64,000 bases of DNA from Hyaloraphidium curvatum SAG 235-1 (GCA_025558095.1 JAIVFI010000021.1:310001-374000), one strand, 5' to 3'. Shown: positions 48,497-64,000, counted from the first letter of the stretch. Translations and numbers: made by a program. The notes: generated by a model from the letters alone, not told the origin.

Positions 48497-50527
48497 TCAT
48501 CCGGGTCCGCCTGCGACTTGTAGTCCCGCTCCAAGGGTCACACCAACGACCGCATCCGTGGCTTCCGGCTCGTCTTCGTCCGACGACGACACCCATCCTT
48601 CGTCCGAGCCTTCCTCGGACGGCTCCTCGCCGCCATTCGCCGCAGGCGCAGCGCCGTTGTCTCCGGTGGCCGGCCGGCGGTGCGTGGTGAGCGCCCACTT
48701 GAGCATCCGGATCAGGTCCGCGGTGTCGTAGAGAACCTGCGGCTTTGCCGCATCCCCGCCCGCGGCGGCATATGCCGGGTCCAAAGACGACTTGGAGCTT
48801 TGGGCCGCGGACCCGCGGCGCGCCCCCTCGCCTTCCTCCCCGCCAGAACGCTCCTTGGAAAACACCAGCGAGCCCGCGGGCCGCACCGTCTCGACCTGCA
48901 CGATCTTCTTGATGCCCATCCGCCGCAGCTCCAGCTCGTCCACCTCGATGGCGTCGCTGCCCCTGGGCACAAAGATGCAGTTGACGTAGCTCGACGGCGG
49001 GTTGTCGAGCCTGTATTCCGGGTCCAAGCTGTGCACCCGGTTCAGGTGGTCCGTCACAGCGCGGACGTAGTCGGTCGCGCGGTCCATGCCGTGGGTCTCG
49101 CGGTCGATGCAGCCGTTGAGGACGAGGATCTTGCGGCACCTCCGCCGCGCGATGGCCTCGCCGACGCCCTTGAGCACGAGGCTCGGGCAAATGCTGGTGA
49201 AGAAGGAGCCCATGGCGTAGATGATGCCGTCGGCCTCGTAGATGTTGCCGGGAACAGCCGAGTGCACGGGCGGGTAGATCTCGTAGGGCTTGGTGGGGTC
49301 CGCGGACGAGATGTCCGAGGAGGCGTAAAAGACGCGCTTTATCCGCGAGTGCAGGAAGGTCTGGGAGTCCTTTCGCACGACGAGGTTGCTGCTCGACGCG
49401 GCCGGGGAGGCGTAGGCCTGGGGTGAAGTGGTCCCGAGCGCGCCCGGGGCCGGCGGCGGGTGCGAGATGGCGTTCTGTCCGCGGATGATGGTGCCGTCCA
49501 CGAGCTCGGCTCCCAGGGTGAGGCGGTCCGCCGTGGCCACGGCCGGGGTGACCAGGGACTGCGGTGGTATGTGCGAGACCCTGCCGTCTTCGCGTCACAC
49601 AACGTCAAGCGGTTCGTTCCAGCTGTGCACGAATGTACCCACAAAGGAAGATCGCCGCGTCCATGCTCTTAAAGAAGGTGCGGGCGCCGGCTACGTGGGG
49701 AATCAGAAGGGTCCCCGGCGCGCCCGCCGATGGGGCATACCAAAGAAAAAGTTGCCCACGCTGCCGTTGCAGAAGTTGAAGAGCGTGGTGGGCTCGCGCA
49801 GGATCTCGTAGTTGAAGTGCAGCAGGAAGGCGCGGATGGTGTCGCGGTAGGGGGTGCCGATGCCCTTCCACAGCGCGTGGGTGCCGTCGACGATCTCTGC
49901 CCACTCGTGCTTGGCCGCCGCCGCGTTGGACGGGTGCAGGCGGTGGCCCAGGAGTGCCTTGACGGCCTGGCCCTCGTCGGTCGAGTCGTCCGAGAGCCGC
50001 AGGCAGCGCGAGCGGATGTCGCCGACGGCGGGGCCGCCGAGCACGCGCACGATCTCGGCGGTCGAGCCGCCGTCGTCCGACACGGGCAGCACGTGCGTGA
50101 CGCGCGTGGTGAGGCGCTTGCCCATCTCCTCCGCAGCCGAGTTGAAGCCCGAGCCGCCCGAGAACACCACGAGCGCGGGCTCACCGGCGCGCGGCTGGCG
50201 GTACGAACGGTACACCGAGGCGCGGCGGCGCGCGACGCCCGCGCCCTGCAGCGACGACTGCGGCGTGTACGAGCCGCGCGCGAGCGCGAGGTACGACGAC
50301 GACAGCGGCGCGTGGAGGCCGCCGGCGGGCACCGACGGCGACGACGACGGGCCGCGCGCGGGCGACGGCGGGGCGGGCGAGGAGCTGAACGCGATGCGCC
50401 GCAGCGGCCGCGGCCCCGGCGCCCCCGGCGGCGCGCTCTCGTCCAGAACGCGCGGCACTCGCGTCGGCCTGGGCGCAACGAGCTCGGAGAGTGCCGAGCG
50501 CGGCGCCGCGCGCGCCTCCTGCGACAT
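48497..50527 (-). CDS. UPF0052/CofD/YvcK(GlmR)-family protein (YNL011C/MEE18-like)
   Basis: LVVFSGGSGFNS, VLPVSDDGGSTAEIVRVLGGPAVGDIRSRCLRL, NGSVGNFFF, GQNAISHP, IIYAMGSFFTSICPSLVLKGVG, LNGCIDRET. Confidence 0.88.
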
Positions 50528-50627
50528 GCGCGCACGTGCTTTGTCTGGGCGTCGGTGGGCGGAGTTCAAGTCAAGCACAAACAACCCCAGGCAGACGTCC
50601 AAACACACCGCGGAGGCACACGCTGCC

Positions 50628-51455
50628 ATGCGTCCGCAGGCATCTGACAAGCACTCTCCGGGGAGTCCGCCGGATCCGTCCCCTGCCGTGCGTCCGCAAC
50701 CCCCCGCGGCCCAAACCTCGGCGGACACTCTGCTCGGGTCGCCCCCGGCCGACGGCCTGCCCACCCCCCCCGCCCCCGGTGTGCATCCCGCCCACCCACC
50801 ATACCCCGGCCCACCCCTCCCCCTGCACGACGGGATCAAAATCGGCGCGGCGCTCATCGCGGAACTGTTCGGCTGCGGGTCGTCGCCACCTTCCCCTCCC
50901 CCCTCGCCATCCGGTGCGCAGCCATCCCCGGGCCGCGCCGATGCCATGCCCCCCCTGGACGCTTTTATGGCCCGCATCATTGCCCGCACGCGCATCGACC
51001 CCGACACCGTGTGCCTGGCGCTGCTCTACTGCCGCCGGCTCAAGGACAAGCATCCGCAATGCAGGGGCTCGCACGGGACCGGGCACCGCCTGTTCCTGGC
51101 GGCCATCCTCACGGCATGCAAAGTCCTGCACGATGATGCATACGAGAACGCGGCGTGGGCAAAGGCCACAGCGGGCCTCTTTTCCAACGCGCAGGTCAAC
51201 GAGATCGAGTACGAGTTCCTCTACTACCTGGACTGGCAGCTGCACGTCGCCGCGGAGCAGTGGGAGGCGCATCTTGGAATGCTGAGCAAACGATCCGGTG
51301 CATCCCTCACGGACTCCAGGCTTGGTGGCGAATGCGCATCCGATCCAGCCCGGTCTTCCGCAAATCAAACTCTGACGAAAGGGACGAATGCGGTGCGGGA
51401 GAAGGGTCGCGTCGCCCGACGACAGCACGGCCGCCAGTTCCAGCCGGCCATGTAG
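50628..51455 (+). CDS. Pho85-type (PCL/Pho80 family) cyclin
   Basis: MPPLDAFMARII..LALLYCRRLK..HRLFLAAILTACKVLHDDAYENAAWA..VNEIEYEFLYYLDWQL. Confidence 0.88.
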   Translation: MRPQASDKHSPGSPPDPSPAVRPQPPAAQTSADTLLGSPPADGLPTPPAPGVHPAHPPYPGPPLPLHDGIKIGAALIAELFGCGSSPPSPPPSPSGAQPSPGRADAMPPLDAFMARIIARTRIDPDTVCLALLYCRRLKDKHPQCRGSHGTGHRLFLAAILTACKVLHDDAYENAAWAKATAGLFSNAQVNEIEYEFLYYLDWQLHVAAEQWEAHLGMLSKRSGASLTDSRLGGECASDPARSSANQTLTKGTNAVREKGRVARRQHGRQFQPAM

Positions 51456-52334: not shown

Positions 52335-53303
52335 ATGCGGCTCTTTGGTGTTCCATCATGGACAATAGGTTTTGCGACTGTACTCGGCGTGGGCATCTTC
52401 GCGCTGCTGCACGCGGGACGGTCGCCCGAAACCGAGTCGTTTCGCCTAGCGCAATACGCTGCAGCCCCGTTTGCGTTCCCGCAGCTTTATCAGTGCCCCT
52501 CTGCCCCGCTGCCCGGACCATACAAGACCATGAATTCCCAGGCGAAAGAGGACGTCTTTCTGTGGGACAACTATTTCTCAAAAGTTCTACCTGCGAATTA
52601 CGAGGGCACTTTTGTCGAAATTGGAGCCCTTGACGGATTCAGGTATGCGAACACTTTGTTCTACGAGCACTACCTGAAGTGGCGAGGTCTGTTGTTTGAA
52701 GCTTTTCCACCAAGCACTCTAGCTTTTCAAGCAAGAAAGGCTGAACGCCCTCGTTCCCACTACTTTGCAATGAGCATCTGTGGAGTTGAGCCTCGCTGGG
52801 ATGGCAAGAAGCATACCATCAAGTTTCTGAATCAAAGTTATCACCCGGCAGTGGCAACGGCGCTCGAAGAGGGCTACAGCTCCAAAAAGTTCCTCGATTC
52901 CTGGCATGCGGATCGGGACAAAAGAACCAGCGTTTCCGTTGGATGCTTGCCCATGCAACCAGTATTGGAAATGACTGGAATTCTCGATATTGACTTATTC
53001 TCGCTCGATGTCGAAGGGGGAGAGTTGATGATAATTCGGACTATCGACTTCGCCATCACAAACATTCGAGTCATTGTCGTGGAAGCAGACGGGCATGATC
53101 CCAGCAAGGATGCGGCAGTGGGCAGATTCTTGTTGGACGCAGGTTTTGAAAGGGCCTTTCAAAACTATCGCAATCAGACGGGCAGTATGGACAATGACTT
53201 TTACATCAACCACCGATTTGATGAGATTCGACAGGCTAGGCGTGGAAAGTGGTCTTCTACTCAACACAGGTTCATCAGTGGGACTGGTTCGGTTTGCCCC
53301 TAA
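52335..53303 (+). CDS. FkbM/Methyltransf_21-family SAM methyltransferase with N-terminal signal anchor, intronless
   Basis: SQAKED, GTFVEIGALDGFRYANTLFYEHYLKWRGLLFEA, IDLFSLDVEGGEL, VIVVE; TM WTIGFATVLGVGIFALL. Confidence 0.88.
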   Translation: MRLFGVPSWTIGFATVLGVGIFALLHAGRSPETESFRLAQYAAAPFAFPQLYQCPSAPLPGPYKTMNSQAKEDVFLWDNYFSKVLPANYEGTFVEIGALDGFRYANTLFYEHYLKWRGLLFEAFPPSTLAFQARKAERPRSHYFAMSICGVEPRWDGKKHTIKFLNQSYHPAVATALEEGYSSKKFLDSWHADRDKRTSVSVGCLPMQPVLEMTGILDIDLFSLDVEGGELMIIRTIDFAITNIRVIVVEADGHDPSKDAAVGRFLLDAGFERAFQNYRNQTGSMDNDFYINHRFDEIRQARRGKWSSTQHRFISGTGSVCP

Positions 53304-53945
53304 GTCCCTAAGTCGTTCCGGATCGTGCTTTGCGGGCCCATTGCCTACAGTCTCTTCATGAGGACAGAGCCGTCACGACTAGAGCGGGACCAACCAGGAC
53401 TGAAGCATAAGCTAGCATTCTCTCTTGCCACACAAAACTTACAGCGTGAGGAGAGGAAAGCCAAAGAGAAGGCTAGCGAGGCAGCTATTTCCAATGACGG
53501 CTGGCCGAGATATGTAGATCGTGTCACGACGGGGCGCGGAAGCTCCGTGTAGACCTGTGTTGACGACGTTGAGGAGTCACTACACAGCGCTCCCCCTAGT
53601 CGTCCCTCGCCGGGGATCGCCGTCCCCCTTGCCCCGGCGCCGGCGCGTTACAGATCGCTGACGATGCAGTCCACTACCATCCGCCTTAAAATTAAAGTCC
53701 AAGAGACCAGCGCACCTTTTTGCGGCCTCAATAGAGCCGGAAGGTTTGCGTTTGCTTTCGGACGCGCTTGCTCTAGAGCATGCAGGCGGACATGCGCGAT
53801 GCTATTCCGTCGACACGGTTCTTGCGTCCCAAGCATTGTGTAATAAAAGCAAGGCGCATGCCACGCGAACCGACCGTTTGGCAAGATTTTTCTGGTTAAC
53901 GACCACGGACGCGAACGGCATTACTGAGCGAGGGCCAACCGCGAC

Positions 53946-54959
53946 ATGCTTGGTCGCGCGCACGCATCGGCAGCGGGAGCAGCAGCTCTTTTCCTGTTTC
54001 TCCTTCTCACGTGGAGGAAACAAGAGCCCGTTCGCGGTGGACGCTGCGGTCTGCAGAGCACGCGCATTAGCAACTCGACTTACGTGCAGCTCGGGCTCCA
54101 CAACGTGCCAGCTCAACCGGGATTCAGCCTTGTGGACGCCTGGGTTTTGAAATCCGAGGCAGCGCGATACTCTTCGCCGCCACGGGAGATCCCACCTGTG
54201 CTTCTGGATGACTTTACAATGCAGGGAAGGATTCCCGTAAGCTATACCTATTACGACAACGCGTACCTGGGCGGGAAGGCCCTCGTCTGGAACTGGACGC
54301 GAGAAGTGGTGGAGACATACCTGAAGGAAGCGCGGGCCCGGACCTCAAAAGGCTTCAACTACCCCATGAGCGAAATATACCAGGCGTTGGATCTGCACGC
54401 CAGCGGTTTCGTCGCTGGGAAGCGCGGCGTGGTGATCGGCTCTGAAAACCCGTGGGCGGAGGCGGTCTTGCTCGAGTACGGCGCTACACACGTGACAACT
54501 ATCGAGTTCGGCAAGATCGTCAGTGAACACCCCCAGCTGTCGACGTACACCGCGACAGAGTTCACGGCGGCCTTTCTAACGGGGTCGATTGAACCGTTCG
54601 ACTTCGCATTCACTTTCTCCAGCTTAGAACACGACGGCTTGGGACGCTACGGAGATAGCATTAACCCTCGCGGGGACTTCTATTCGGTCTCCCGCCTTCT
54701 CTCTGTGGTTCGGCCCGGCGGTGCTCTCTTCCTCGGCGTGCCGTGCTGCTACGATGCTCTCAACTGGAACGGACACCGTGTATACGGCTCCATCAGACTT
54801 GCGCAGTTGTTTGCTGGATGGTTTCCTGTGGATGTCATCGGCAAGTATCCGACAACAAGTGGCGACTATGGTCAGCCCCTTTGGTTTCTCCAAAATCGCT
54901 ACGCGTGTGAGGAAGGAAACAGCGCAATCAAGATGCCTGGTATCTTGAAGGGACTCTGA
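53946..54959 (+). CDS. DUF268-family putative SAM methyltransferase with N-terminal anchor, intronless
   Basis: VVIGSENPWAEAVLLEYGA..TTIEF, FDFAFTFSSLEHDGLGRYGDSINPRGD, RPGGALFLGVP..DALNWNGHRVYGSIRL..LFAGW. Confidence 0.87.
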   Translation: MLGRAHASAAGAAALFLFLLLTWRKQEPVRGGRCGLQSTRISNSTYVQLGLHNVPAQPGFSLVDAWVLKSEAARYSSPPREIPPVLLDDFTMQGRIPVSYTYYDNAYLGGKALVWNWTREVVETYLKEARARTSKGFNYPMSEIYQALDLHASGFVAGKRGVVIGSENPWAEAVLLEYGATHVTTIEFGKIVSEHPQLSTYTATEFTAAFLTGSIEPFDFAFTFSSLEHDGLGRYGDSINPRGDFYSVSRLLSVVRPGGALFLGVPCCYDALNWNGHRVYGSIRLAQLFAGWFPVDVIGKYPTTSGDYGQPLWFLQNRYACEEGNSAIKMPGILKGL

Positions 54960-55208
54960 GATGACGTCGGCATTTGTGTGGAGCATTTTGCCACCAGCTT
55001 CGACCCAGGAAGATTCTGTGCTGGAATTCCTGCCATTAACCGCCGTTTTAATCTTGGATGCCAAGGGAGCCGGGAGGCAACTCGTGTTGATGGCGAAGGC
55101 GAAACGCCATCCTTGCAGGTTCACCTCATCTGCGCAATGTGTTCTCGGTCTTCTCGGCCCGAAAAATGCCCGGTGAATCATAGGAGCTACAGTAACATCT
55201 TACACCTA

Positions 55209-56531
55209 TCACCTCGGATTCCTGTGGCGCATGACGCGGTCGACGGAAGCAATGACCCTGGATGCGAGAATGGAGGCGGAGAAAGTTCTTGCAGCGAAGC
55301 GAGAACCGCGTTCCCGAATCGGTTCGTAAGCTTCGTAGTTCTCTAGGATCTGATGGATCTGCTGCACGATGGCATCTGGCTCCTCGCTTTTGAGAAAGAC
55401 GCAATCTTCCATGTCCCTCAAGGGCCCATCAACTGTGCGATCAACTAGCAGAAGACCCCCGCTGCCCAAGATCTCGGTGTTTCGCGCGTTTGCGTACCAG
55501 CCACCGTACCCGTCCACGACATGGAAGTTGAGGCTGATCTTTGCGCTGGACCAGACTTTCCGGTTATCCTCGTACCTTATCCTACCCTTATAGAACTCTG
55601 GAAAGGGCGTCCCAACCTGGTCCGAGCCATAGATTGCCAGCCTCAGTCCAGTTTTGCGCGAGTCCTCCACGAGTGCATGGAATATGAGCGTCCTGTTTCG
55701 TGGAAAGCCGCGCTCGCTGTAGGAACGGCTCGCTACGAAGGCGACGTCCGCGAGATACTCCGGATCCGGATCGTTGTAGTGGGTCGAGTCGATCATGGGG
55801 ACAAAGGCGTGGGCTTCTGTTGCGCCGGCGAGCAGATAGGTGGGGAGGGCAGCACTGCCACTGCTGAACACGATGTCAAACACGTCCTTAATGGCGTGCA
55901 TATTGCCGGCCGAGAAGAGCGAGAAGGGATCGTCCCAGTTGATGAGCACCCAGATTTGCCCGGGATAGACCGTCCGTGCGGCAAGCAGCTTCGCAGGGTC
56001 GTGGGACCAATGCCACCAAATCACAACGTCGATGCTTTTCAGCTCCTCTGTGAAGTCAAGCGCCTTTCCCGCCAGCTGCCGGCTCAGGGAGCCAAAAGTC
56101 GTCACGTTTGCGCCTGCGAGTGCCACGAACGCATCTGCAAAGGTCCGCAGTGGCTCCACCAAGTTGTCCCACCATCCGACGAGTGCTACGCGCTTGCCGC
56201 GCAACAGCATGGAGGGCTCTGCCTCGCGACTGTGGAAGTAACGAGGGTCCCAGCGCTCGGCAGCAGATTCACTGTCGTCTGCGGTGAAGGCAACCCTGGC
56301 GAGAGGTCTCCGGGTTGTATCATTTAGCATGGGGGCATCTGCAGGTTCCAGGGACGCGAACTGCCTGCCGAATGCGGCATTCGGCGTGGGCATGCGCCCG
56401 TCAACAGGGGCATGGCTCCCAAATCCTCCCCCATTCCAAAGAATCGCCACGACAAAGCCCAGGGCAAAAGGGAGGATTGTTACGACGGGGAAACCCTTGA
56501 GATGCAGGGATGGAGAAAGGGAAAGAGCCAT
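55209..56531 (-). CDS. GT-B glycosyltransferase (Glyco_trans_1_2, CgeB/YkvP-like) with N-terminal anchor, intronless
   Basis: NWDDP, DVAFVAS, LAIYGS, SSAKISLNFH..YANARNTEILGSGGLLLVD, IRERG; TM VVTILPFALGFVVAILW. Confidence 0.8.
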   Translation of the reverse strand: MALSLSPSLHLKGFPVVTILPFALGFVVAILWNGGGFGSHAPVDGRMPTPNAAFGRQFASLEPADAPMLNDTTRRPLARVAFTADDSESAAERWDPRYFHSREAEPSMLLRGKRVALVGWWDNLVEPLRTFADAFVALAGANVTTFGSLSRQLAGKALDFTEELKSIDVVIWWHWSHDPAKLLAARTVYPGQIWVLINWDDPFSLFSAGNMHAIKDVFDIVFSSGSAALPTYLLAGATEAHAFVPMIDSTHYNDPDPEYLADVAFVASRSYSERGFPRNRTLIFHALVEDSRKTGLRLAIYGSDQVGTPFPEFYKGRIRYEDNRKVWSSAKISLNFHVVDGYGGWYANARNTEILGSGGLLLVDRTVDGPLRDMEDCVFLKSEEPDAIVQQIHQILENYEAYEPIRERGSRFAARTFSASILASRVIASVDRVMRHRNPR

Positions 56532-56711
56532 AACCAGCGGTCTTCATCGGCATCGGAGTGAACGAGGCATGACGGACGGTTAGCGGCGCGTGATCGTCAA
56601 CAACCGGTTATTACGACTCTATCGAAGCCTGTAGATCGTCTTGCAGCGATAAGACGGAACTCTATTGTCGCCACCACCTCGTTTACAAGCAGGGAGCGGC
56701 CTTACCTGGAT

Positions 56712-58325
56712 TCAAATGCCACATCCCGCAAAAATCATGCGTCTTGTTAGTTCGTCCATCACCCCTTGCAGGCTTCCCAGGTGGGCGTTGTCGGCGGAGG
56801 CATCCACTAGAGGGAGAGCGAGGTCGTACATTGACACCATAGAGAAAGCATTTGGTAGCTTTGCAAGAGCTCGGTCGATCACTCCCTGGTACAGACGAAG
56901 TCTGTGGTTTGTTCGCCAATCCCCGTACCAATGGACCCATTCATCATTTCGAATGCAGAGTGGAACTGTTTCCATCCATACTGGGCTGACTACTGAACGT
57001 GCCAGCTCCGTAAAGTTTATCTGAACAGCCTCTTGGTACTGTGCGACTGGAGTCCGGGCTCCTGCCGCATAGTGCTGTCCAAAATTGACAGCCACAAAAC
57101 TTGCGTTCGTGTTGTTCAAAGACAAACGCGTCCCAAAGTTATCGGGCTCGTAACAGAGGTGAAACCCGGGACAAGATGGGTTCTCCCTGCAGACTCGCGT
57201 TTCCGTCGGTGCCGTTGCATGTCTCACATGGCACAGTCTCGAAAATAGGCGATCAAACAAGGTTCTTGTGTGGGAGTCGCCTTGTAGTATCCACGTCTTG
57301 TTGGAAACACAGCGAGATAGTGTTTCGGCGTCCAGGGCTCTCCAACGGCAAGAATAAGGGACCCACGTCAGATCCGCGTGAAGATTCGTGTAGTAGCGTA
57401 ATCCAGGACCATATGGCCATTGGCGGGGCAAATATGGTGCTTCCTGGGCCGCAAACATTCCCTTGGTTGAATGTCGTCGAATCCAGCGGCCTAATGGCGA
57501 TGGATTCAAACACTCTGTTGCCAAAGAATGGTGGAGCATCCTTTGCCTGACTTCATCTGTTGCATCTGTGTCACCCAAACCTACAAACAAATGATTGCCA
57601 AGGACGTTATCCAAAGTGAGTCTCGGGTATCCTTGAATTGTTTCGTTTATCGCCCTCCATTCCGAGCGGATTACCGTTGCACGTATGCGAAATTTACCTG
57701 GAATTGTTGCCCGGAATGGGAACACGTACACACAGCTTCCCAAGTGTCTTCCCTTAAGCTGAAGGAATTCGGGTCCCTCCAAAAGGATTTCAATGTCATC
57801 GGGACCCAGGTTTTGAGCATCCTGGACAACGTCGTGATCGGCCATTGCAAGCGGCGGCTCACTGCAACGCGCCTTTTCAAGCTCAGATGCATCAACCACT
57901 GGCCCTGGTTTTGATCCACATGCGGCAGCCGAAGGGGGACAATTTCGCAGACGTTCCAAGCGAATGTAGCCCTCGCATTTAGTTCCACATTGTTCCCCGT
58001 GGCCCAAGTGCCACTGCGAGGGCCGAGATTTTCGAAAGAAATCTATCGTCGCATCTGTCCACAAATCAGAGGGTAGTCCTGCCAGATCGCCGAAACAGAG
58101 CGTGGAACGCCAATGGAGTGCAACAGGTAGAGGAGAGACGCGAGGCACTGTCCCGTTGGCGTCAAACGGCTCCGAAAAGACGACCGCCCCTGCTGTCGCC
58201 GAAAGGGGCTTGCACTCAAAAGTGGGAGTATTGCGAGGGAGCGCCAGAATCACTAGGTTGGCGGCCAGGAACATCCCGGCAAGCACGTGCAATGGTTTCC
58301 TCGTGCAGGATGATAGGTGTTCCAT
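56712..58325 (-). CDS. SGNH-fold O-acyl esterase/transferase (PC-esterase/NXPE/TBL/Cas1 N-domain-like) with N-terminal anchor, intronless
   Basis: WVPYSC..LSRCVSNKTWILQGDSHTRTLF (GDS nucleophile), VNFGQH, C-terminal DNAH (DxxH); TM LHVLAGMFLAANLVILAL. Confidence 0.8.
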   Translation of the reverse strand: MEHLSSCTRKPLHVLAGMFLAANLVILALPRNTPTFECKPLSATAGAVVFSEPFDANGTVPRVSPLPVALHWRSTLCFGDLAGLPSDLWTDATIDFFRKSRPSQWHLGHGEQCGTKCEGYIRLERLRNCPPSAAACGSKPGPVVDASELEKARCSEPPLAMADHDVVQDAQNLGPDDIEILLEGPEFLQLKGRHLGSCVYVFPFRATIPGKFRIRATVIRSEWRAINETIQGYPRLTLDNVLGNHLFVGLGDTDATDEVRQRMLHHSLATECLNPSPLGRWIRRHSTKGMFAAQEAPYLPRQWPYGPGLRYYTNLHADLTWVPYSCRWRALDAETLSRCVSNKTWILQGDSHTRTLFDRLFSRLCHVRHATAPTETRVCRENPSCPGFHLCYEPDNFGTRLSLNNTNASFVAVNFGQHYAAGARTPVAQYQEAVQINFTELARSVVSPVWMETVPLCIRNDEWVHWYGDWRTNHRLRLYQGVIDRALAKLPNAFSMVSMYDLALPLVDASADNAHLGSLQGVMDELTRRMIFAGCGI

Positions 58326-58467
58326 GAATCCTTTGATTGCGGGTGCTGGTTGACACGTCCGCTCCGGCTGGCGATGACGGGGATGTCCGCAACTCAGAAT
58401 GTAGTAGGCATAGGGCAAACGCTTGGACAACATCCTTTACAGGCGGCGACACTCCATCTCCCCCTCA

Positions 58468-59850
58468 ATGGCATGGCTAAACGATTTGGCACATAGAATA
58501 CGGACATCGTGGCGACTGGGCGGCCTGGCATTTTTCGCAGGACTTCTTTGTGCTCGGCTCCTCATAGGAAGTTCGGACGCGCCCTTTCCAACTCCAAAGT
58601 TGTGCCGGGCGGCTTTGACCGAATTCGAGGAATGTTTACTGCGAGAACGAAATGAATCGAGCATTGAAGCCCTGTTGCCCCCTCCGCCGGTTCTGAAAGC
58701 AGGAGGAGCTTCGAAAGCCGACATTGAGACCATTGTCTCGCACATCCTGGCGTACTCCAAAGCGATGCGCAGCCTTGAATCAGGCTCGCATGCCTGTCGT
58801 CAACGGACATTGCTCTATAGGTGCACTGAGGAGGGCTGCGGGGGCCTAGGGGATCGCATCCGAGGCATGATCCTTGTCTTCTACTGGGCTCTCCTAAGCG
58901 GTTCACGATTTGGGCTTTCGTTTGAGTTCCCTGTCAGCCTCTCAGCGTATTTCGAGGCTCCGTTTCCCGAATCTCTTCCTTTGTTCGGGGTGTCTCCAAA
59001 CTCTACAGACGAGAAGCATCTCAATTTCATCTACCATTTTCCAAGTTTCGGATCGCGTGGTCTGAACCAATTACTGGGCAACGAAGCCGTTGTGGATGTC
59101 GTGACAAATGGCCAGGTGTGGCGCCACCTGCTGGAGAATGCTGAGTACGAAGGAAGGGGTCGGGCATTCTTCCCGTACTTGTATTCACTCAACAAGCTGC
59201 AAATGGCGCACGTGGCGCTGATCCTCTTGGTCAGCAAACCGACGCAGTACTTGCAATCCGCCGTCAATCAATATTTGGGGCGCCGTGCAAGCTCTGGTTC
59301 AACAGCAAAAGTTGGCCTCCAGCTTCGGCACGGAGATCATGCGATACTCCCTGAACAAGCTGCGTTCTGGAACGCGACGCAGGTCTCCAGGAGGCGTCTA
59401 GTGAAGCGAGTAGGCGACGCGTCACTTTCCTGCTTTGCAAAAAAGGCCGCCTCCATTTGCTTAGAGCTAACCGACAAGAAATCGTGCTCCTTCTTCATTA
59501 CCAGCGACAGCAAGCGCGCTTTTTCTTTTCTGCAGCACAGACTTGCTACTCTGCTTGAGGGCAAGAAACAACACTCGGTCTTCCAGACGGATGGACATGC
59601 TGTTCACATTGACAAGCCGCCAAAATCAAGCTTAGCCGCTCAAGATCGGCGCATTGTGTTCTTGAAGTCCTTCGTTGACTGGACGCTGTTGTCCCGTATG
59701 GATGTGCTTCTGATAAGCCCCAGCGGTTTTGGCAAAACTCCGGCTTGGTTGTCCTATGTGGAGACCTACATGATCGATGCCACTCCGGCAGGACAGGAGA
59801 ACTGCGTCTGGCACAGTTACTTTGAGCACGTGCAAGGTGATGCATGGTAA
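58468..59850 (+). CDS. Fucosyltransferase of the alpha-1,2/alpha-1,6 superfamily (GT11/GT23/GT37/NodZ-like) with N-terminal anchor, intronless
   Basis: GGLGDRIRG, motif I VGLQLRHGD, motif II FFITSDS, HID, motif III DWTLLSRMDVLLISPSGFG; TM LGGLAFFAGLLCARLLI. Confidence 0.85.
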   Translation: MAWLNDLAHRIRTSWRLGGLAFFAGLLCARLLIGSSDAPFPTPKLCRAALTEFEECLLRERNESSIEALLPPPPVLKAGGASKADIETIVSHILAYSKAMRSLESGSHACRQRTLLYRCTEEGCGGLGDRIRGMILVFYWALLSGSRFGLSFEFPVSLSAYFEAPFPESLPLFGVSPNSTDEKHLNFIYHFPSFGSRGLNQLLGNEAVVDVVTNGQVWRHLLENAEYEGRGRAFFPYLYSLNKLQMAHVALILLVSKPTQYLQSAVNQYLGRRASSGSTAKVGLQLRHGDHAILPEQAAFWNATQVSRRRLVKRVGDASLSCFAKKAASICLELTDKKSCSFFITSDSKRAFSFLQHRLATLLEGKKQHSVFQTDGHAVHIDKPPKSSLAAQDRRIVFLKSFVDWTLLSRMDVLLISPSGFGKTPAWLSYVETYMIDATPAGQENCVWHSYFEHVQGDAW

Positions 59851-59854
59851 AACA

Positions 59855-60908
59855 TCATTGCAATAGTTCAGCAATACGAATAGCGCGACACCAGCGCCGC
59901 CGTCGTGGGCCCTTAATGCAACGTATTCCACGCACCCCGCATCGTTCGTTATTTTCCCGATGAGCCAACACGTAGCCGATGTCCACAAGTTGGCGATAAG
60001 AGTGTTTGAGATGTGCTGCAGACAGCGTCCTGTTCTCGCACGGGACTCCGATTCCCCTGTTCTGTTCAGGAGGACAAATTCTGAGTTGACCGGAGCGGAT
60101 CCCGTCAAGACCGACTCATTGTTGAGAAATGCAATTCGAAAAGAACTTGGAAAGGAAGGATAACTGGGCCAGGTGCATGCCCTCCAGCGACGGCCAAAAT
60201 CTGTTTCGCCCACGATTCGACGAGGGCATATTCGTGTCCCTCAATGTCGATCTTGAGCAGATCGATTTTCGAATGGCCAAGTCTTTGCGCTATCACGGCG
60301 AGCGATTCGAATGGCCCGAATTGTCCCTCTTTCCCTTGGGCGACGTCCTTCTCCGTCCCCAAACAAGACAAGAGGTACTTCACACGGGGCTTGTCGCGGG
60401 GAGCGAATCGTGCGGGATCAACCGTGCAGTCCAAAGTCACAATCTCGCACGGAGTATGCTTCAGTATGTCCATCTCAAAGTCCGTGTTTGCGTTGCTGCT
60501 GACGCTGTAGACGACGCAACCGCTCTGAAGAGCGTGCGGCTCGCAAACCCATTTGGCGCCGTCCGAATAGGTGCCCGCCGTCCCGCCGAAATAGCTCTTT
60601 TCGGGGCGTTTGTGGATTATGGGGTTGACGTTGAAACGCACGTGAGAGTACGAAGGCTCTCCCAAGGATTCGTTCAAGGGGCACGATTCCAGCGCGCGAA
60701 CGAAGCCGTCGAGCATATAATCAATAGAAGTCCCGCGGACTGAATCGAAGGTTGATTTGGTCCAGCTCCCGAGATACGGGTTGGCGACGCAATCTGACGC
60801 CGTGGTGACAGAGACGAAGGGTGGACTACGTGAGTCGGAGCACAACGCGAAGATGTCACTCCCAGCACAACTGCCCTGCTCTCCGGTGCCATTTGCAGTT
60901 AGACCAGG
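59855..60908 (-). CDS. Methyltransf_22 (METTL24-like) methyltransferase; 5' and 3' ends unresolved, possibly degraded
   Basis: DGAKWVC, CVVYSVSSNANTDFE, CEIVTLD, LGHSKIDLLKIDIEGHEY, QVLFELH; C-terminal motifs GYVLAHRENN and CVEYVALR lie in two other frames; no in-frame ATG upstream. Confidence 0.7.
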
Positions 60909-61658
60909 CTAGGCCAGCCCAGCTCAAATCTCGGTGAGTCCTGACTCGTGTGTGGCAAGTACCCAAGCTTTGGTCCAAGCAATCACACGCCAAGATACTC
61001 GGCGTTCCACGCGAAAGGTCCCTAGGCCTTTCTCGGAAGGACGTTTGCCGATAAACACACCTACCGGAGCAGGTGCCCGGGCCGACCACGAACTCGTTGC
61101 GCGCCGAAAGAACTCTTGGCACACCTCTCCCTACCCTTGTTGACGCCAATCGAGTACTTACCTAGCCGTCGAAAGTTGAGAGCGGGTTCCCCGCGAGCAG
61201 TGTTGACGAGCAAACAGAGGTTGCAGGGGAGGAGGGAGCGGCAGGTCGGTGAGCGACGTCTCAAGGGGTTCGATAGCCTAGATCGTCCAACAGGGGCCGT
61301 CCCATCTCAGCTGCACCAGCCCGATCCCCGAGTCTATACGCCAGGCGCTCTTGGCTGCCAAGGGGCCAGAAGTATTGTTCGATCGGAAATTTGTGGGCCA
61401 CTACCCTTTCCCGCACATCCGGACAGTAAGTTGTGGTACATACCATGATGTGGTAGACGATTGTTCCTGGACCCCTCGAGAGAAACACTGTTGGATCCGT
61501 AAAGCCTAGGTGGCCATAGGACCTGGCAACGGAGGCGAGACAGCGGCGCGGGCTGTACAGTGATCGCGGTGTGAAGTGTGTGAGCCTCGCGGTTACAGCC
61601 GTTGAGCGCGGGGCGCACGAACAAGTCGTCTTGGCCCCCATTCCCCGGCTGATAACTG

Positions 61659-63215
61659 ATGACCGCCGCGCTCCGGCGGACTGTCTTGCCCCTGAGTGTT
61701 CTCGCAATCTCTTTGTGGAGCCTTGTGACCGCCTGGAGCATCCTCGGAGTTCGTCCCCGTCAACTTCGTCCCGCGACGGCCCCGAAAGATGGAGCCGGGG
61801 ACGCCGATGGACCTTCCTGGGATCCACTCTGGAGCGGTTCCGACTCTGGCAACTCCCCGGACCCGACATGGAGCGAGGCTGACACCGCGGAATACTCGAG
61901 CCTGCTTCGGCGGCTCGGGAACGGGACGTTGTCTTTCTCATCGAACGAGCCCGAGTTGGACTGGCGGTCTTGGATCGCCGCAACAGGATGGAACGGGTCG
62001 GCGGGAGCCTTGCAGCAGCACGCGTGCGACGGGTCCAATTTCGCGGACGGACGGCTCGCGGACTACCAGTTCGGATCGTGGGCCAACTTCCGGACTGCGC
62101 CGAAACGCCTCAGGCAGCAGCTGTTTCGGTCTACCTTGGTAGACAACGTCGACCTGGAAATCTTTCGCGTCGTGAACGGCTCGCTCTCGGTAAAGAACTG
62201 CCACGTCGATTCGGGGTGCCTGCGCGGCCTCAACGGCGGGCGACTCTACCTACCCCTGCTGCAATTCATCCTGGACACCGCACGGCACGCAGGTGTACGG
62301 CTGCCGGACGTCCGCATCATGTTCTTCAGCACCGACGGGGTCGGTAGCGTCGGCCAGACGCACCCCATCGCCACTGCCTCCAAAGTGCAGGGAAGCAAGT
62401 TCCTCCTGTTCCCCAACTGGGAGCACGCGGAAAAGCTCCTGAAGGCGCGCGATCGGAACGCGTGGGTAGCGACTTCGGCGTGGGAGGAGCGTGCCCCGGT
62501 GGCGGTCTTTCGCGGAGGGTTGACGGGGCACGATTTTGGGCCCGCGGGGTTCGTCCCCCTGCAGCAAATACGAGTCAGCGTGGTGCGACAAGGCGCGCTG
62601 TATCCGGATCTGATCGACGCCGCGTGCGACTGGAACTCCCCCGGGCTGCCGGCCAGGGGCTTTACGCCGGAGATGAGGGCCAACATCCTTGACAAGTACT
62701 GCAAAAACGGCACTTTTCTATCCATGCAGGATGCCGCGAACCGCTACAGGTTCCAGGTGAGCACGGACGGATTCGGCGCCGCCTTCCGGACCTTTGCCGT
62801 CCTCTCCTCCGGCGCTGTTCCCATGCTGCCGCGGGACGGGGCCTTCAGCGAGCACTACTACCCTCTGTTGAAGCCGTGGGTGCACTACGTGCCCACAGAG
62901 TCTTTCCGGCTGCACGAGGCCGTGTCGTTCCTCAGATTGCACGACGGGCTCGCCCGGCGGATCGCAAAGGCCGCCCTGGCCTTTTCGCTGAGCAACCTGA
63001 CGCTCAAGGGCACGTTCTGCTACGTCCTCCAGATCTGGATGAGGCTGGCCGAGCTCCAGGAGGGCCTGGACTGGGAGGCCATCGAGCTCGAGTTCGCGGC
63101 GGAGATGCAAGACCGCCGCTGGCCTCCCATGGCGAACGCGACCGCGGATACCGGAGGCGCCGATGCGCGCGCCTTTGTGCCGTACTCTGTGTGGAAGCAG
63201 ATCATGAAGGAATAG
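61659..63215 (+). CDS. Glycosyltransferase family 90 (CAP10/POGLUT-like xylosyl/glucosyltransferase) with N-terminal anchor, intronless
   Basis: LPDV, WEERAPVAVFRGGLTG, YRFQVSTDG..FR..LSSG, EHYYPLLKPWVHYVP, LRLHDGLARRIA; TM VLPLSVLAISLWSLVTAWSIL. Confidence 0.88.
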   Translation: MTAALRRTVLPLSVLAISLWSLVTAWSILGVRPRQLRPATAPKDGAGDADGPSWDPLWSGSDSGNSPDPTWSEADTAEYSSLLRRLGNGTLSFSSNEPELDWRSWIAATGWNGSAGALQQHACDGSNFADGRLADYQFGSWANFRTAPKRLRQQLFRSTLVDNVDLEIFRVVNGSLSVKNCHVDSGCLRGLNGGRLYLPLLQFILDTARHAGVRLPDVRIMFFSTDGVGSVGQTHPIATASKVQGSKFLLFPNWEHAEKLLKARDRNAWVATSAWEERAPVAVFRGGLTGHDFGPAGFVPLQQIRVSVVRQGALYPDLIDAACDWNSPGLPARGFTPEMRANILDKYCKNGTFLSMQDAANRYRFQVSTDGFGAAFRTFAVLSSGAVPMLPRDGAFSEHYYPLLKPWVHYVPTESFRLHEAVSFLRLHDGLARRIAKAALAFSLSNLTLKGTFCYVLQIWMRLAELQEGLDWEAIELEFAAEMQDRRWPPMANATADTGGADARAFVPYSVWKQIMKE

Positions 63216-63345: not shown

Positions 63346-64000
63346 TCACTGCACCGGCGTCTGCGGATAGGGCGACGTCGACAGCCCCGAGAGGGGCCAC
63401 GTCGGCGTCGCTGGCGGCGACATGATCGCCGAAGAACCCCGCGAAAGGGAGCTCTTGCTGCTGTACGACGACGAGGTCCGGGAAAGCGAGGCCATCGAGC
63501 CGTTGGGCGGCCGGTCGCCCGGCGACAGCCACGGGTGCTGCCAGATGGCCTGGGACGTCAGCCTCCGCGAGGGATTGGGGGCCAGGATCTTGCGCACGAG
63601 ATCGCGCGCGGCTTCCGAGATCCTGGCCGGCTCCCTGGGGGGCGTCTGCTGCGGGGCCGCGGGGTCACCCGGGTCCGTCAGGGACCTCGCCAGCAGCCGC
63701 GGCGGCCGCTCGTCGGGGAAACGAAAGTCCGCGCGGCAGATTTTGGAGTAGAGCGACTTTGGCTTCTGGTTTGGGAGCAGCTGGAAAGGCAGCTGCCCGG
63801 TGAGGATGGCGAAACTGGGAAGCGGGGTCGGGATTGTGAGCGAAAGGGCTGCCGCGAAAGGTCGTCCGACCCACAGGATGACGCCGCACGCCCAGATGTC
63901 GACGCCGCGGGGATCGTACTCCTGTCCGAGGATCATTTCCGGTGCCGCGTACTCTTCGGACCCGCATCGCGTCGTCAGCCGCACGCCGGGCTCGAAGAAC
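63346..64000 (-). CDS. 3' part of a CAMK-group Ser/Thr kinase (Prr1-like); 5' end outside the window
   Basis: LTTRCGSEEYAAPEMILGQEYD..DIWACGVIL|FAILTGQLPF..ARDLVRKIL..PSRR..HPWL. Confidence 0.85.
   Translation of the reverse strand, partial: FFEPGVRLTTRCGSEEYAAPEMILGQEYDPRGVDIWACGVILWVGRPFAAALSLTIPTPLPSFAILTGQLPFQLLPNQKPKSLYSKICRADFRFPDERPPRLLARSLTDPGDPAAPQQTPPREPARISEAARDLVRKILAPNPSRRLTSQAIWQHPWLSPGDRPPNGSMASLSRTSSSYSSKSSLSRGSSAIMSPPATPTWPLSGLSTSPYPQTPVQ

What the first reader, a model, noticed from the sequence alone, without database searches (positions are those of the whole stretch)
52335..63215. Seven-gene, mostly intronless cluster of membrane-anchored glycan-building and glycan-decorating enzymes: candidate eukaryotic polysaccharide biosynthesis gene cluster
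Seen: between a PCL cyclin and a kinase lie seven consecutive genes from seven different families, with no recognisable unrelated gene among them. They are an FkbM methyltransferase, a DUF268 methyltransferase, a CgeB-like GT-B glycosyltransferase, an SGNH O-acyl enzyme, a fucosyltransferase, a Methyltransf_22 and a GT90. Six have a short N-terminus plus one hydrophobic helix and are single-exon over 1-1.6 kb, whereas flanking housekeeping genes mostly carry many introns. The central genes look less GC-rich. Known: this topology is typical of Golgi glycan enzymes; GT90 (Cap10/Cxt1) and SGNH/Cas1-type proteins xylosylate and O-acetylate the Cryptococcus capsule; FkbM-type enzymes can O-methylate sugars. 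Inference: because the genes are not tandem paralogues, this resembles a co-inherited pathway, analogous to a bacterial capsule locus. It may make a fucosylated, xylosylated, O-methylated and O-acylated wall, mucilage or glycoprotein glycan, possibly acquired horizontally from an algal or protist donor. It has no PKS/NRPS core, so standard BGC finders would likely miss it.
Basis: partly seen in the sequence, partly recalled or inferred. Interest (0 to 1): 0.9.

Follow-up and report, generated by a model that had tools for sequence, protein, structure and literature searches.

The report
Fungal glycan-tailoring enzyme gene cluster
Seven neighbouring genes in an early-diverging, fungus-type genome all encode Golgi-type enzymes that add sugars, methyl groups or acetyl groups; the clustering is real and far beyond chance, and the genes probably decorate one fucose-type surface glycan, but no expression or chemical data exist yet.

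Summary
Window 52335-63215 carries seven consecutive genes, 142-750 bp apart, from seven glycan-enzyme families.
- Five pass Pfam cut-offs: FkbM, DUF268, Glyco_trans_1_2, Methyltransf_22 and GT90.
- The 537-aa gene is an SGNH/PC-esterase. It has invariant GDS, N-G and DxxH motifs, and its AF2 model best matches plant xylan O-acetyltransferase XOAT1.
- The 460-aa gene is only a probable member of the fucosyltransferase superfamily.
- Six have one N-terminal anchor helix. The Methyltransf_22 gene has no ATG and no anchor, so it may be defective.

Chance is excluded: about 1e-12 such clumps are expected.

Linkage recurs elsewhere. A second locus on contig C2 holds the closest FkbM paralogue (65%), the only SGNH paralogue (46%) and another Methyltransf_22. 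In three chytrid genomes and in unnamed eukaryotic contigs, DUF268 lies beside FkbM or Methyltransf_22, relatives of the putative fucosyltransferase, or relatives of the SGNH gene. The immediate neighbours of DUF268 are rich in fucose genes (GT11 in 14 of 59 giant-virus neighbours).

Transfer from an algal or protist donor is not supported. No RNA data exist, and the locus has no sugar-nucleotide, polymerase or export genes. It is therefore a tailoring cluster, not a capsule-like locus. Other readers of this scan noted similar clusters elsewhere in this genome.

The parts
49851..51452 (+). Upstream boundary gene: PHO80/PCL-type cyclin (exon ORF). Not part of the cluster.
   Evidence: Pfam Cyclin_N 1.6e-9 and Cyclin PF08613 6.4e-9. 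GC3 is 0.85.
52335..53303 (+). g1: type II membrane FkbM-family (Methyltransf_21) methyltransferase, 322 aa, one exon.
   Evidence: PF05050 E 2.5e-11 over the whole domain. Anchor helix at residues 10-28. A 65%-identical paralogue lies in the C2 cluster.
53946..54959 (+). g2: DUF268 protein, 337 aa, one exon. It is the only copy in the genome. Candidate SAM-dependent glycan O-methyltransferase coupled to fucosylation.
   Evidence: PF03269 E 1e-34. Single genomic copy. Anchor helix at residues 5-23. Neighbour census. Tree.
55209..56531 (-). g3: type II membrane GT-B glycosyltransferase with a Glyco_trans_1_2 (CgeB-like) C-terminal domain, 440 aa, one exon.
   Evidence: PF13524 E 6.3e-12. Anchor helix at residues 13-31. 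No sequence relative in the PDB.
56712..58325 (-). g4: type II membrane protein with a beta-rich N-terminal domain and an SGNH/PC-esterase domain, 537 aa from Met37 of the 573-aa ORF. Probable glycan O-acetyltransferase or esterase.
   Evidence: 277 relatives. Invariant GDS, R354, N414, G416 and near-invariant D512, H515. AF2 pLDDT 86.8. Foldseek top hit XOAT1 6cci, E 2.8e-6. One paralogue only, on C2.
58326..58467 (.). 142-bp head-to-head spacer between the start codons of g4 and g5. Candidate shared bidirectional promoter.
   Evidence: Coordinates. No shared k-mers with the other upstream regions. The function is inferred only.
58468..59850 (+). g5: type II membrane protein, 460 aa, one exon, single copy. 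Probable glycosyltransferase of the fucosyltransferase superfamily (GT11/23/37/65-like).
   Evidence: XG_FTase E 0.004, below the cut-off. Atlas feature neighbours are FUT8_N_cat, O-FucT, XG_FTase and GT11. Motifs GGLGD, VGLQLRHGD, FFITSDS and SPSGFG were read. Relatives lie beside DUF268 in Geranomyces and in contig L099.
59858..60908 (-). g6: Methyltransf_22 gene. The main open frame is 60108-60908. A probable 100-nt GT..AG intron spans 60016-60115, and a C-terminal exon runs to about 59858. There is no in-frame ATG and no anchor helix, so it is possibly truncated or mis-modelled.
   Evidence: PF13383 E 2.9e-15, covering model positions 65-196 of 252. Frames. Splice signals read. No hydrophobic segment upstream. 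The joined exon model was not searched.
60667..60853 (.). 187-bp segment inside the 5' part of g6 that is 91% identical to C21:390617-390803, in the next glycan sub-cluster.
   Evidence: blastn, tblastn, and a branch point of the contig graph in run X1 at 60667-60724.
61659..63215 (+). g7: type II membrane GT90 glycosyltransferase, 518 aa, one exon, divergent from g6.
   Evidence: PF05686 E 6e-16. Matches POGLUT2, POGLUT1 and Rumi in the PDB. Anchor helix at residues 13-31. It is one of 12 GT90 loci, with paralogues of 52% and 44% identity on the same contig. GC3 is 0.81.
63346..64000 (-). Downstream boundary gene: protein kinase, which continues beyond the window. Not part of the cluster.
   Evidence: Pkinase E 4e-25 on L014:3-1607. 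ORF 63346-63984.

Best explanation
This is a genuine, selectively maintained cluster of secretory-pathway (ER/Golgi lumen) glycan-tailoring enzymes in a zoosporic-fungus-type genome.

Contents:
- Three glycosyltransferases: a CgeB-like GT-B enzyme, a fucosyltransferase-superfamily-like enzyme, and a GT90.
- Two or three methyltransferase-type proteins: FkbM, DUF268, and a possibly defective Methyltransf_22.
- One XOAT1-like SGNH O-acetyltransferase.

Proposed mechanism (inferred):
1. The glycosyltransferases add a short side chain that contains a 6-deoxyhexose, probably fucose.
2. That side chain is then O-methylated. DUF268 is the enzyme coupled to the fucosylation step.
3. The chain is also O-acetylated by g4, which takes acetyl groups from the Cas1-type membrane acyltransferase encoded elsewhere.

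The product would be a decorated wall, mucilage or glycoprotein glycan. Activated sugars, transporters and any backbone synthase are supplied from other loci. The locus is one of several mix-and-match glycan-enzyme clusters in this genome.

Shown: gene content, protein topology, non-random clustering, and recurrence of parts of the set.
Inferred: a common substrate, the identity of the sugars, and co-regulation.
For: Gene content:
- Family assignments.
- Six N-terminal anchors.
- The seven genes are consecutive, with gaps of 142-750 bp, and g4 and g5 lie head to head.

Chance is excluded: 1e-12 clumps are expected.

Recurrence within the genome:
- g4's only paralogue (46%) and g1's 65% paralogue lie 14 kb apart on C2, together with a Methyltransf_22, a GT61 and a GT77. 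The chance that two given single loci fall that close is about 1e-3.
- About 14-19 kb past the window's end there is a second sub-cluster: a fucosyltransferase-like gene, a Methyltransf_22 gene and a GNAT-DegT fusion.

Recurrence across lineages:
- Fimicolochytrium: STELLO, FkbM, DUF268, TPT, UDP-glucose dehydrogenase, epimerase and Nucleotid_trans.
- Geranomyces: two NTP-transferases, DUF268, Methyltransf_22-like sequences, a g5 relative and GT17.
- Synchytrium: Methyltransf_21, DUF268 and Methyltransf_22.
- A 360-kb eukaryotic contig: a g4 relative 2.8 kb from DUF268.
- L099: a GT32-like gene, a g5 relative, DUF268 and GT8. L101: a FUT8-like gene, a transporter-GT2 fusion and DUF268.

Link between DUF268 and fucose, from its immediate neighbours:
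- 31 metagenome contigs (56 ORFs): GDP-mannose dehydratase x4, NodZ x3, XG_FTase x3, GT10 x2, FkbM x3.
- Giant-virus contigs (59 ORFs): GT11 x14, GT10 x1.

Supply genes exist elsewhere in the genome: two GMD loci and one Cas1_AcylT.
Against: - There is no RNA evidence at all. The only run is genomic DNA.
- The upstream regions share no motif.
- The locus has no sugar-nucleotide, transporter, synthase or export gene.
- g5's family assignment is below the Pfam threshold, and profile comparisons with a FUT8-like ORF were inconclusive.
- g6 lacks a start codon and an anchor.
- The FkbM neighbours of DUF268 in chytrids show no BLAST similarity to g1, so the recurrence is at family level, not orthologue level.
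- DUF268 is not in a glycan neighbourhood in Ceratobasidium, Plasmodiophora or Picochlorum.
- FkbM, GT90 and Methyltransf_22 are multi-copy here (at least 19, 12 and 10 loci), so members could act on different substrates.
- g7 differs in composition (GC3 0.81) and may merely be adjacent.
Confidence: 0.55

Rival explanations
1. Glycogene island without a common pathway. Intron-poor, low-GC3 glycan-enzyme genes accumulate in permissive regions through local duplication, rearrangement and birth-and-death turnover. The seven enzymes act on different substrates, and the linkage has no functional meaning beyond shared chromatin or regulation.
For: - Several families are expanded: GT90 12 loci, FkbM at least 19, Methyltransf_22 10.
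- Most members genome-wide sit in long open frames, so being intron-poor is a trait of these families, not of this cluster.
- There are signs of local rearrangement: the 187-bp duplicated piece of g6, transposon remnants (GCR1_C, Tf2) beside the C2 cluster, and a probably truncated g6.
- Other first-stage notes list many further glycan clusters in this genome.
- There is no shared promoter motif.
Against: - The seven genes are from seven different families, not tandem copies.
- The same family combinations recur in unrelated genomes, viruses and a second locus. Neutral accumulation does not predict this.
Confidence: 0.3
2. Horizontally acquired island. The block, or its core g1-g6, entered from an algal, protist, bacterial or giant-virus donor. 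This would explain the lower GC3, the lack of introns and the patchy taxonomic distribution.
For: - GC3 is 0.51-0.68 against mostly 0.63-0.85 in the flanking genes.
- The genes are intronless, while GMD and Cas1 in the same genome are split into several exons.
- DUF268 is patchily distributed: chytrids, a tardigrade, rotifers, diatoms, plasmodiophorids and Chlamydiae. It is also common in giant-virus contigs, with 68 loci.
Against: - The window's DUF268 lies in a 96%-supported eukaryotic clade with three chytrids, while 63 of 65 viral sequences form a separate clade.
- A clade of the window copy with the three chytrids is not rejected (AU p 0.10).
- None of g3-g7 has a relative within 10 kb of viral DUF268 genes.
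- The g4 family was not found in viral contigs.
- g1, g4 and g7 have diverged paralogues in the genome (65%, 46%, 52%), so they have been resident for a long time.
- The best outside identity is only about 40-52%, so there is no recent donor.
- Low GC3 is shared by an RCC1-like ORF (window 35861-37540) with no link to glycans.
Confidence: 0.12
3. Chance run: the families are so abundant that seven in a row is expected.
For: Three of the families have 10-19 or more loci.
Against: - The expected number of seven-in-11-kb clumps is 1e-12 for the 50 loci found, and 6e-5 even if 600 glycan genes are assumed.
- In 20,000 simulations the maximum clump was 4, and that occurred with a frequency of 5e-5.
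- DUF268 and g5 are single-copy, and g4 has two copies.
Confidence: 0.01

Closest known systems
Galactosaminogalactan (GAG) five-gene cluster of Aspergillus, Metarhizium and Neurospora (PMC8224951, PMC11356417)
   Same: A fungal chromosomal cluster of non-homologous genes that together make and modify one extracellular polysaccharide.
   Different: The GAG cluster contains an epimerase, a processive synthase, a deacetylase and hydrolases, and it is shown by experiment to be co-regulated. The present locus has no sugar-nucleotide enzyme and no synthase. It consists of type II Golgi-type transferases, methyltransferases and an O-acetyltransferase, sits in an early-diverging lineage, and has no functional data.
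Clusters of putative Golgi glycosylation genes in Caenorhabditis elegans (C13A2, K06H6, T15D6; PMC7614267)
   Same: Eukaryotic clusters that mix glycosyltransferases of different CAZy families, methyltransferases and DUF268 proteins. Whether the clustering has functional meaning is explicitly unknown.
   Different: The nematode clusters contain many paralogues of one family. Here there are seven different families in seven genes, and parts of the set recur in fungi, viruses and prokaryote-like contigs.
Bacterial O-antigen and capsule loci
   Same: Co-localised glycosyltransferases plus O-methyl and O-acetyl tailoring enzymes. Content is modular and differs between loci.
   Different: There is no operon, no Wzx/Wzy or ABC export system, no sugar-nucleotide genes and no initiating transferase. 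The proteins carry eukaryotic type II anchors.
Plant TBL/XOAT1 xylan O-acetyltransferases (PC-esterase family; PDB 6cci)
   Same: g4 shares the SGNH fold, the GDS and DxxH motifs and the type II topology. XOAT1 is its best structural match.
   Different: Sequence identity is only about 12%. g4 has a different, beta-rich N-terminal domain, as in NXPE-like proteins. Its substrate is unknown.
Cryptococcus Cxt1/Cap10 and animal POGLUT1/Rumi (GT90)
   Same: g7 carries the GT90 domain.
   Different: Only the C-terminal half aligns. Sugar and acceptor specificity cannot be inferred. Cryptococcus capsule genes are not clustered (from my own knowledge).
Giant-virus glycosylation gene clusters (Mimivirus, chloroviruses)
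   Same: DUF268, FkbM, GT11 and sugar-nucleotide genes are co-localised in many giant-virus contigs.
   Different: The window's copy is not in the viral clade. The other six genes have no viral counterparts next to DUF268, apart from FkbM in 6 of 68 loci.

Membership tests
Eukaryotic functional (metabolic-type) gene cluster | Physically adjacent, non-homologous genes, more tightly grouped than chance allows | tested here: met
   Seven families in seven consecutive genes, with an expected 1e-12 clumps.
Eukaryotic functional (metabolic-type) gene cluster | The members act in one pathway | not testable with these tools
   Inferred only, from enzyme classes and from recurring neighbourhoods.
Eukaryotic functional (metabolic-type) gene cluster | Co-expression | not testable with these tools
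   The only public run holding the locus is genomic DNA.
Eukaryotic functional (metabolic-type) gene cluster | Linkage conserved or recurring in other genomes | tested here: inconclusive
   Sub-sets recur in three chytrids, in unnamed eukaryotic contigs and in a second locus of this genome. The recurrence is at family level, and three other named eukaryotes lack it. Close relatives were not available.
Bacterial capsule or O-antigen-type locus | Sugar-nucleotide synthesis genes inside the locus | tested here: not met
   None among the seven genes. The GMD loci lie on other contigs.
Bacterial capsule or O-antigen-type locus | Polymerase, flippase or export genes, and operon organisation | tested here: not met
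   No such Pfam families are present. The strand pattern is + + - - + - +.
SGNH / PC-esterase (g4) | Block I GDS, block III N/G and block V DxxH are conserved | tested here: met
   G349, D350, S351, N414 and G416 are invariant. D512 and H515 are at least 90% conserved in 31 sequences and invariant in 11.
SGNH / PC-esterase (g4) | SGNH alpha/beta fold | tested here: met
   AF2 pLDDT 86.8. Foldseek finds XOAT1 at E 2.8e-6, then GDSL esterases and PatB. The Pfam NXPE4_C hit is below its cut-off.
Fucosyltransferase superfamily GT11/23/37/65/68 (g5) | A significant profile match | tested here: not met
   XG_FTase scores 16 bits against a cut-off of 23.4. There is no PDB sequence hit. hhalign against one FUT8-like ORF gives E 0.17.
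Fucosyltransferase superfamily GT11/23/37/65/68 (g5) | The conserved Arg-containing motif I plus motifs II and III, in order | tested here: inconclusive
   VGLQLRHGD, FFITSDS and SPSGFG were read by eye. The same order is seen in the downstream FT-like ORF. Language-model neighbours agree. No usable structure was obtained.
GT90 (g7) | A Pfam GT90 domain above its cut-off | tested here: met
   58.8 bits against a cut-off of 24. POGLUT2 scores E 2e-14.
Class I SAM methyltransferase (g2, DUF268) | A SAM-binding Rossmann fold with motif I | tested here: inconclusive
   The profile search of the PDB gives only 3opn at E 0.85, over the VIGS..PW.E region. Some source annotations say 'SAM-dependent methyltransferase'.
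Horizontally transferred island | Phylogenetic placement away from the host lineage | tested here: not met
   Only DUF268 could be tested. It lies in a clade with chytrids, and the AU test gives p 0.10.
Horizontally transferred island | Deviant base composition | tested here: met
   GC3 is lower in g1-g6. The same holds for the C2 cluster and for an unrelated RCC1-like ORF.

The most novel reading that the evidence does not exclude
Two linked claims.
1. DUF268 proteins are the still-unidentified Golgi or luminal O-methyltransferases that act on fucose (6-deoxyhexose) residues. This would explain why they lie next to fucosyltransferases and GDP-mannose dehydratase in fungi, unnamed eukaryotes, prokaryote-like contigs and giant viruses.
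2. Zoosporic fungi organise their surface-glycan decoration as several interchangeable clusters, each combining an FkbM, Methyltransf_22 and SGNH core with different glycosyltransferases. This would be a eukaryotic counterpart of O-antigen locus diversity.
Probability: 0.3. Interest if true: 0.75.

Novelty: new variant of a known kind. Interest (0 to 1): 0.58.

Why it matters
Glycan biosynthesis genes in eukaryotes are usually scattered. That is one reason why the enzymes behind many modifications are unknown, for example the O-methylation of fucose and mannose in nematodes, molluscs and fungi. PMC7614267 states that the fucose methyltransferase is unidentified.

This locus is a compact set of seven families. 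Sub-sets of it recur in a second locus of the same genome, in chytrids, in unnamed eukaryotes and in giant viruses. That gives gene-neighbourhood evidence of the kind used in bacteria, and it assigns testable roles to DUF268, to an uncharacterised relative of NXPE and TBL O-acetyltransferases, and to an orphan fucosyltransferase-like family. It also suggests that early-diverging fungi build unusual decorated wall or mucilage glycans, which standard biosynthetic-cluster finders do not detect.

Tried and rejected
- Word-index homologue searches found nothing for g4 and only the query itself for g5. g4 was rescued by the exhaustive search.
- The single-sequence AF2 model of g5 was unusable, with pLDDT 36, so no fold search was run on it.
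- Local profile iteration and hhalign could not link g5 to FUT8- or NodZ-like ORFs. BLASTP of g5 against the downstream FT-like ORF was not significant.
- Expression could not be assessed. The one run holding the locus consists of genomic contigs at uniform depth, so there are no splice or transcript data.
- No 7- to 9-mer is shared by the upstream regions.
- Giant-virus origin of the block is rejected. Only FkbM co-occurs with viral DUF268, in 6 of 68 loci, and none of g3-g7 does. The g4 family was not found in viral contigs.
- Scans with g4 alignments failed or were empty.
- Synteny in close relatives (cyclin next to kinase without the block) could not be tested, because no near relative is served by the tools. 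The best outside DUF268 identity is 52%.
- A hydrophobic 5' exon for g6 was sought in all frames of the 750-bp spacer and not found.
Its putative 3' piece alone gave no Pfam hit.
- The organism name (Hyaloraphidium curvatum) comes only from other agents' notes. It was not verified here.

Full report
WHAT IS THERE

The window is G000:C21:310001-374000 of a 31.9-Mb, 55-contig genome. Between a PHO80/PCL-type cyclin (49851-51452 +) and a protein kinase (63346 to the window's end and beyond) lie seven open reading frames. The gaps between them are only 642, 249, 180, 142, 254 and 750 bp. There is no room for another gene of ordinary size.

Pfam places five of the seven above the curated cut-offs:
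- g1: FkbM/Methyltransf_21.
- g2: DUF268.
- g3: Glyco_trans_1_2.
- g6: Methyltransf_22.
- g7: GT90. It also matches POGLUT1/2 and Rumi in the PDB.

g4 has only a sub-threshold NXPE4_C hit in Pfam, and the word-index search found nothing.
- The exhaustive HMMER search found 277 relatives, the best at 39-42% identity.
- In their alignment the SGNH signature is fixed. G349-D350-S351, R354, N414 and G416 are invariant, and D512 and H515 are nearly invariant.
- An AF2 model built on that alignment is confident, with pLDDT 86.8.
- Its best PDB match is the plant xylan O-acetyltransferase XOAT1 (6cci, E 2.8e-6). GDSL esterases and the peptidoglycan O-acetyltransferase PatB follow.
- Language-model neighbours are uncharacterised Mucoromycota and Zoopagomycota proteins and animal NXPE proteins.
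- g4 is therefore an SGNH/PC-esterase-type enzyme, most like known glycan O-acetyltransferases.

g5 is the least secure assignment.
- The XG_FTase hit is below the cut-off (E 0.004).
- There is no PDB sequence hit, and the single-sequence fold failed.
- Its language-model neighbours are all fucosyltransferase-superfamily clusters: FUT8_N_cat, O-FucT, XG_FTase and GT11.
- It carries, in the right order, a GGLGD box and motifs resembling the three fucosyltransferase motifs: VGLQLRHGD, FFITSDS and SPSGFG. These were read, and the motif definitions come from my own knowledge of the GT11/23/65/68 superfamily.
- I rate 'fucosyltransferase-superfamily glycosyltransferase' at about 70%. Sugar specificity is open.

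Topology and gene structure:
- Six proteins have one N-terminal hydrophobic helix within residues 5-35 and no other. This is the type II anchor typical of Golgi enzymes.
- All six are uninterrupted ORFs that span their whole domains.
- g6 is the exception. Its open frame (60108-60908) has no in-frame ATG before the domain, and there is no hydrophobic segment in any frame of the 750-bp spacer.
- g6 probably has a 100-nt GT..AG intron (60016-60115) that restores a C-terminal exon in phase.
- A 187-bp piece of its 5' part is duplicated at 91% identity 30 kb downstream.
- g6 may therefore be truncated or rearranged.

Composition: g1-g6 have GC3 of 0.51-0.68, against mostly 0.63-0.85 in the flanking genes. 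g7 (0.81) looks like the flanks. The same low GC3 is also seen in the C2 cluster and in an RCC1-like ORF with no link to glycans.

IS IT MORE THAN CHANCE?

Whole-genome six-frame searches gave these counts:
- GT90: 12 loci.
- FkbM: at least 19.
- Methyltransf_22: 10.
- Glyco_trans_1_2: 7.
- g4 family: 2.
- DUF268: 1.
- g5 family: 1.

After merging overlaps this makes 50 loci. Random placement gives an expected 1e-12 clumps of seven within 11 kb. The figure is still only 6e-5 if the genome held 600 glycan genes. Simulated maxima never exceeded four.

RECURRENCE, THE MAIN EVIDENCE FOR FUNCTION

Within the genome:
- g4's only paralogue (46% identity) lies at C2:636.5-638.1 kb, and g1's closest paralogue (65%) lies at C2:622.6-623.8 kb.
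- Between and beside them are a Methyltransf_22, a 1061-aa Nucleotid_trans (GT77-type) gene, a GT61 and two unknown ORFs. All have low GC3, and the locus is bordered by transposon remnants.
- The same trio of FkbM, Methyltransf_22 and SGNH is thus linked twice, each time with different glycosyltransferases.
- About 14-19 kb beyond the window's end there is a further sub-cluster. It holds a fucosyltransferase-like ORF with the same four motifs, a Methyltransf_22 and a GNAT-DegT (WecD-WecE-like) fusion.

Across lineages, around DUF268:
- Fimicolochytrium jonesii: STELLO, FkbM, a TPT transporter, UDP-glucose dehydrogenase, an epimerase and Nucleotid_trans.
- Geranomyces: two NTP-transferases, a HAD hydrolase, two Methyltransf_22-like sequences, a g5 relative (E 1e-13) and GT17.
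- Synchytrium: Methyltransf_21 and Methyltransf_22.
- Hypsibius (a tardigrade): GT8 and Fringe.
- A g4 relative on a 360-kb eukaryotic metagenome contig lies 2.8 kb from a DUF268 gene.
- Contig L099 carries a GT32-like gene, a g5 relative (E 2e-10), DUF268 and GT8. L101 carries a FUT8-like gene, a transporter-GT2 fusion and DUF268.

A census of the immediate neighbours of DUF268:
- In 31 metagenome contigs (56 ORFs): GDP-mannose dehydratase x4, NodZ x3, XG_FTase x3, GT10 x2, FkbM x3 and Methyltransf_24 x3.
- In giant-virus contigs (59 ORFs): GT11 alpha-1,2-fucosyltransferase x14, plus GT10 and GDP-mannose-dehydratase-type enzymes.

DUF268 is thus habitually coupled to fucose supply and fucosyl transfer. 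This fits its position beside g5 here.

Counter-examples: DUF268 has no glycan neighbours in Ceratobasidium, Plasmodiophora or Picochlorum. The chytrid FkbM neighbours are not detectably orthologous to g1.

ORIGIN

- DUF268 is patchily distributed and is frequent in giant-virus contigs, with 68 loci.
- In a 176-row tree the window's protein lies in a 96%-supported clade with three chytrids, Ceratobasidium, Hypsibius and Picochlorum. By contrast, 63 of 65 viral sequences form a separate clade.
- Holding the window's copy with the three chytrids is not rejected (AU p 0.10).
- None of g3-g7 occurs next to viral DUF268 genes.
- g1, g4 and g7 have old paralogues within the genome.
- A recent transfer, and specifically an algal or protist donor, therefore has no support. 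Ancient transfers cannot be excluded.
- Other agents of this scan name the organism Hyaloraphidium curvatum, a monoblepharid chytrid. I could not verify this, but it agrees with the chytrid affinity seen here.

HOW IT PROBABLY WORKS

Shown: the gene content, the protein topology and the linkage.

Inferred:
1. The enzymes sit in the ER/Golgi lumen and decorate one acceptor.
2. The three glycosyltransferases add a short side chain that includes a 6-deoxyhexose.
3. DUF268 and FkbM (and Methyltransf_22, if it is functional) O-methylate the chain.
4. g4 O-acetylates it, using acetyl groups delivered by the single Cas1-type acyltransferase at C13:601.7-602.9 kb.
5. GDP-fucose can be made, because there are two GMD loci.

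The 142-bp head-to-head arrangement of g4 and g5 suggests a shared promoter, but no common motif was found. No RNA data exist.

The locus lacks sugar-nucleotide, transporter, synthase and export genes. It is therefore a tailoring cluster, not a self-contained capsule-like locus.

COMPARISON AND NOVELTY

- Fungal polysaccharide clusters are known, for example the galactosaminogalactan five-gene cluster (PMC8224951, PMC11356417).
- Mixed clusters of Golgi glycosylation genes that include DUF268 have been remarked on in C. elegans, without functional interpretation (PMC7614267).
- The same paper states that the fucose-modifying methyltransferase is unidentified.
- I found no paper on such clusters in early-diverging fungi.
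- This is a new variant of a known kind. Its main value is the cross-kingdom neighbourhood evidence, which gives DUF268, the g4 family and the g5 family testable roles.

VERDICT

The cluster is real and probably functional. Fucose, O-methyl and O-acetyl decoration are plausible. Xylose, the capsule analogy and horizontal origin are unsupported.
- Interest is moderate to high (0.58).

Noticed in passing
G000:C2:618800-638150 (loci L091-L093): A second heterogeneous glycan-enzyme cluster: GT61, an FkbM (65% identical to g1), a 1061-aa Nucleotid_trans/GT77-type protein, a Methyltransf_22, two unknown ORFs (406 and 844 aa) and the only paralogue of g4. GC3 is 0.51-0.58. GCR1_C and Tf2-type transposon remnants lie at 638-642 kb.
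   Followed up: partly
G000:C21:387880-393160 (L015:3880-9160): A downstream sub-cluster: a type II fucosyltransferase-like ORF (GLGNN, GVHLR, FLATDS and SESTFS motifs; XG_FTase E 3e-5), a Methyltransf_22 and a GNAT-DegT/WecE-type aminotransferase fusion. A weak FkbM-like ORF (L014:6228-7283, E 0.004) lies between this sub-cluster and the window.
   Followed up: partly
window 60667-60853 and L015:6617-6803: A 187-bp stretch of the 5' coding part of g6 is duplicated at 91% DNA identity between the two sub-clusters. It lies in the spacer upstream of the GNAT-DegT fusion. This is a sign of recent local rearrangement or of a pseudogene fragment.
   Followed up: partly
window 60695-61149: In the only public run (X1, genomic contigs), the contig that covers the g6-g7 spacer has k-mer depth 164, against about 707 for the rest of the locus. 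The cause could be a polymorphic or heterozygous region, or an artefact of the assembly graph at the repeat.
   Followed up: no
window 35861-37540 (-): An intronless 560-aa RCC1-repeat ORF has unusually low GC (0.53) and GC3 (0.48) for this genome. Low GC3 is therefore not specific to the glycan genes.
   Followed up: no
L010 (Fimicolochytrium jonesii JAHLJU010000035.1, 11.7-33.0 kb): A fuller glycan biosynthesis cluster in a chytrid: STELLO-type glycosyltransferase, FkbM, DUF268, TPT nucleotide-sugar transporter, UDP-glucose dehydrogenase, NAD-dependent epimerase/dehydratase and Nucleotid_trans, in about 13 kb.
   Followed up: partly
L117:8219-17413, L107:6654-11405, L106:5090-9097: In some metagenome contigs the DUF268 domain is embedded in very large single ORFs of 1300-3000 aa. 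These may be multi-domain glycan-modifying proteins.
   Followed up: no
G000:C18:323759-325065 and C24:228139-229243: There are two GDP-mannose 4,6-dehydratase loci. The C18 copy is split into at least four exons, whereas the glycan-tailoring genes are intronless.
   Followed up: no
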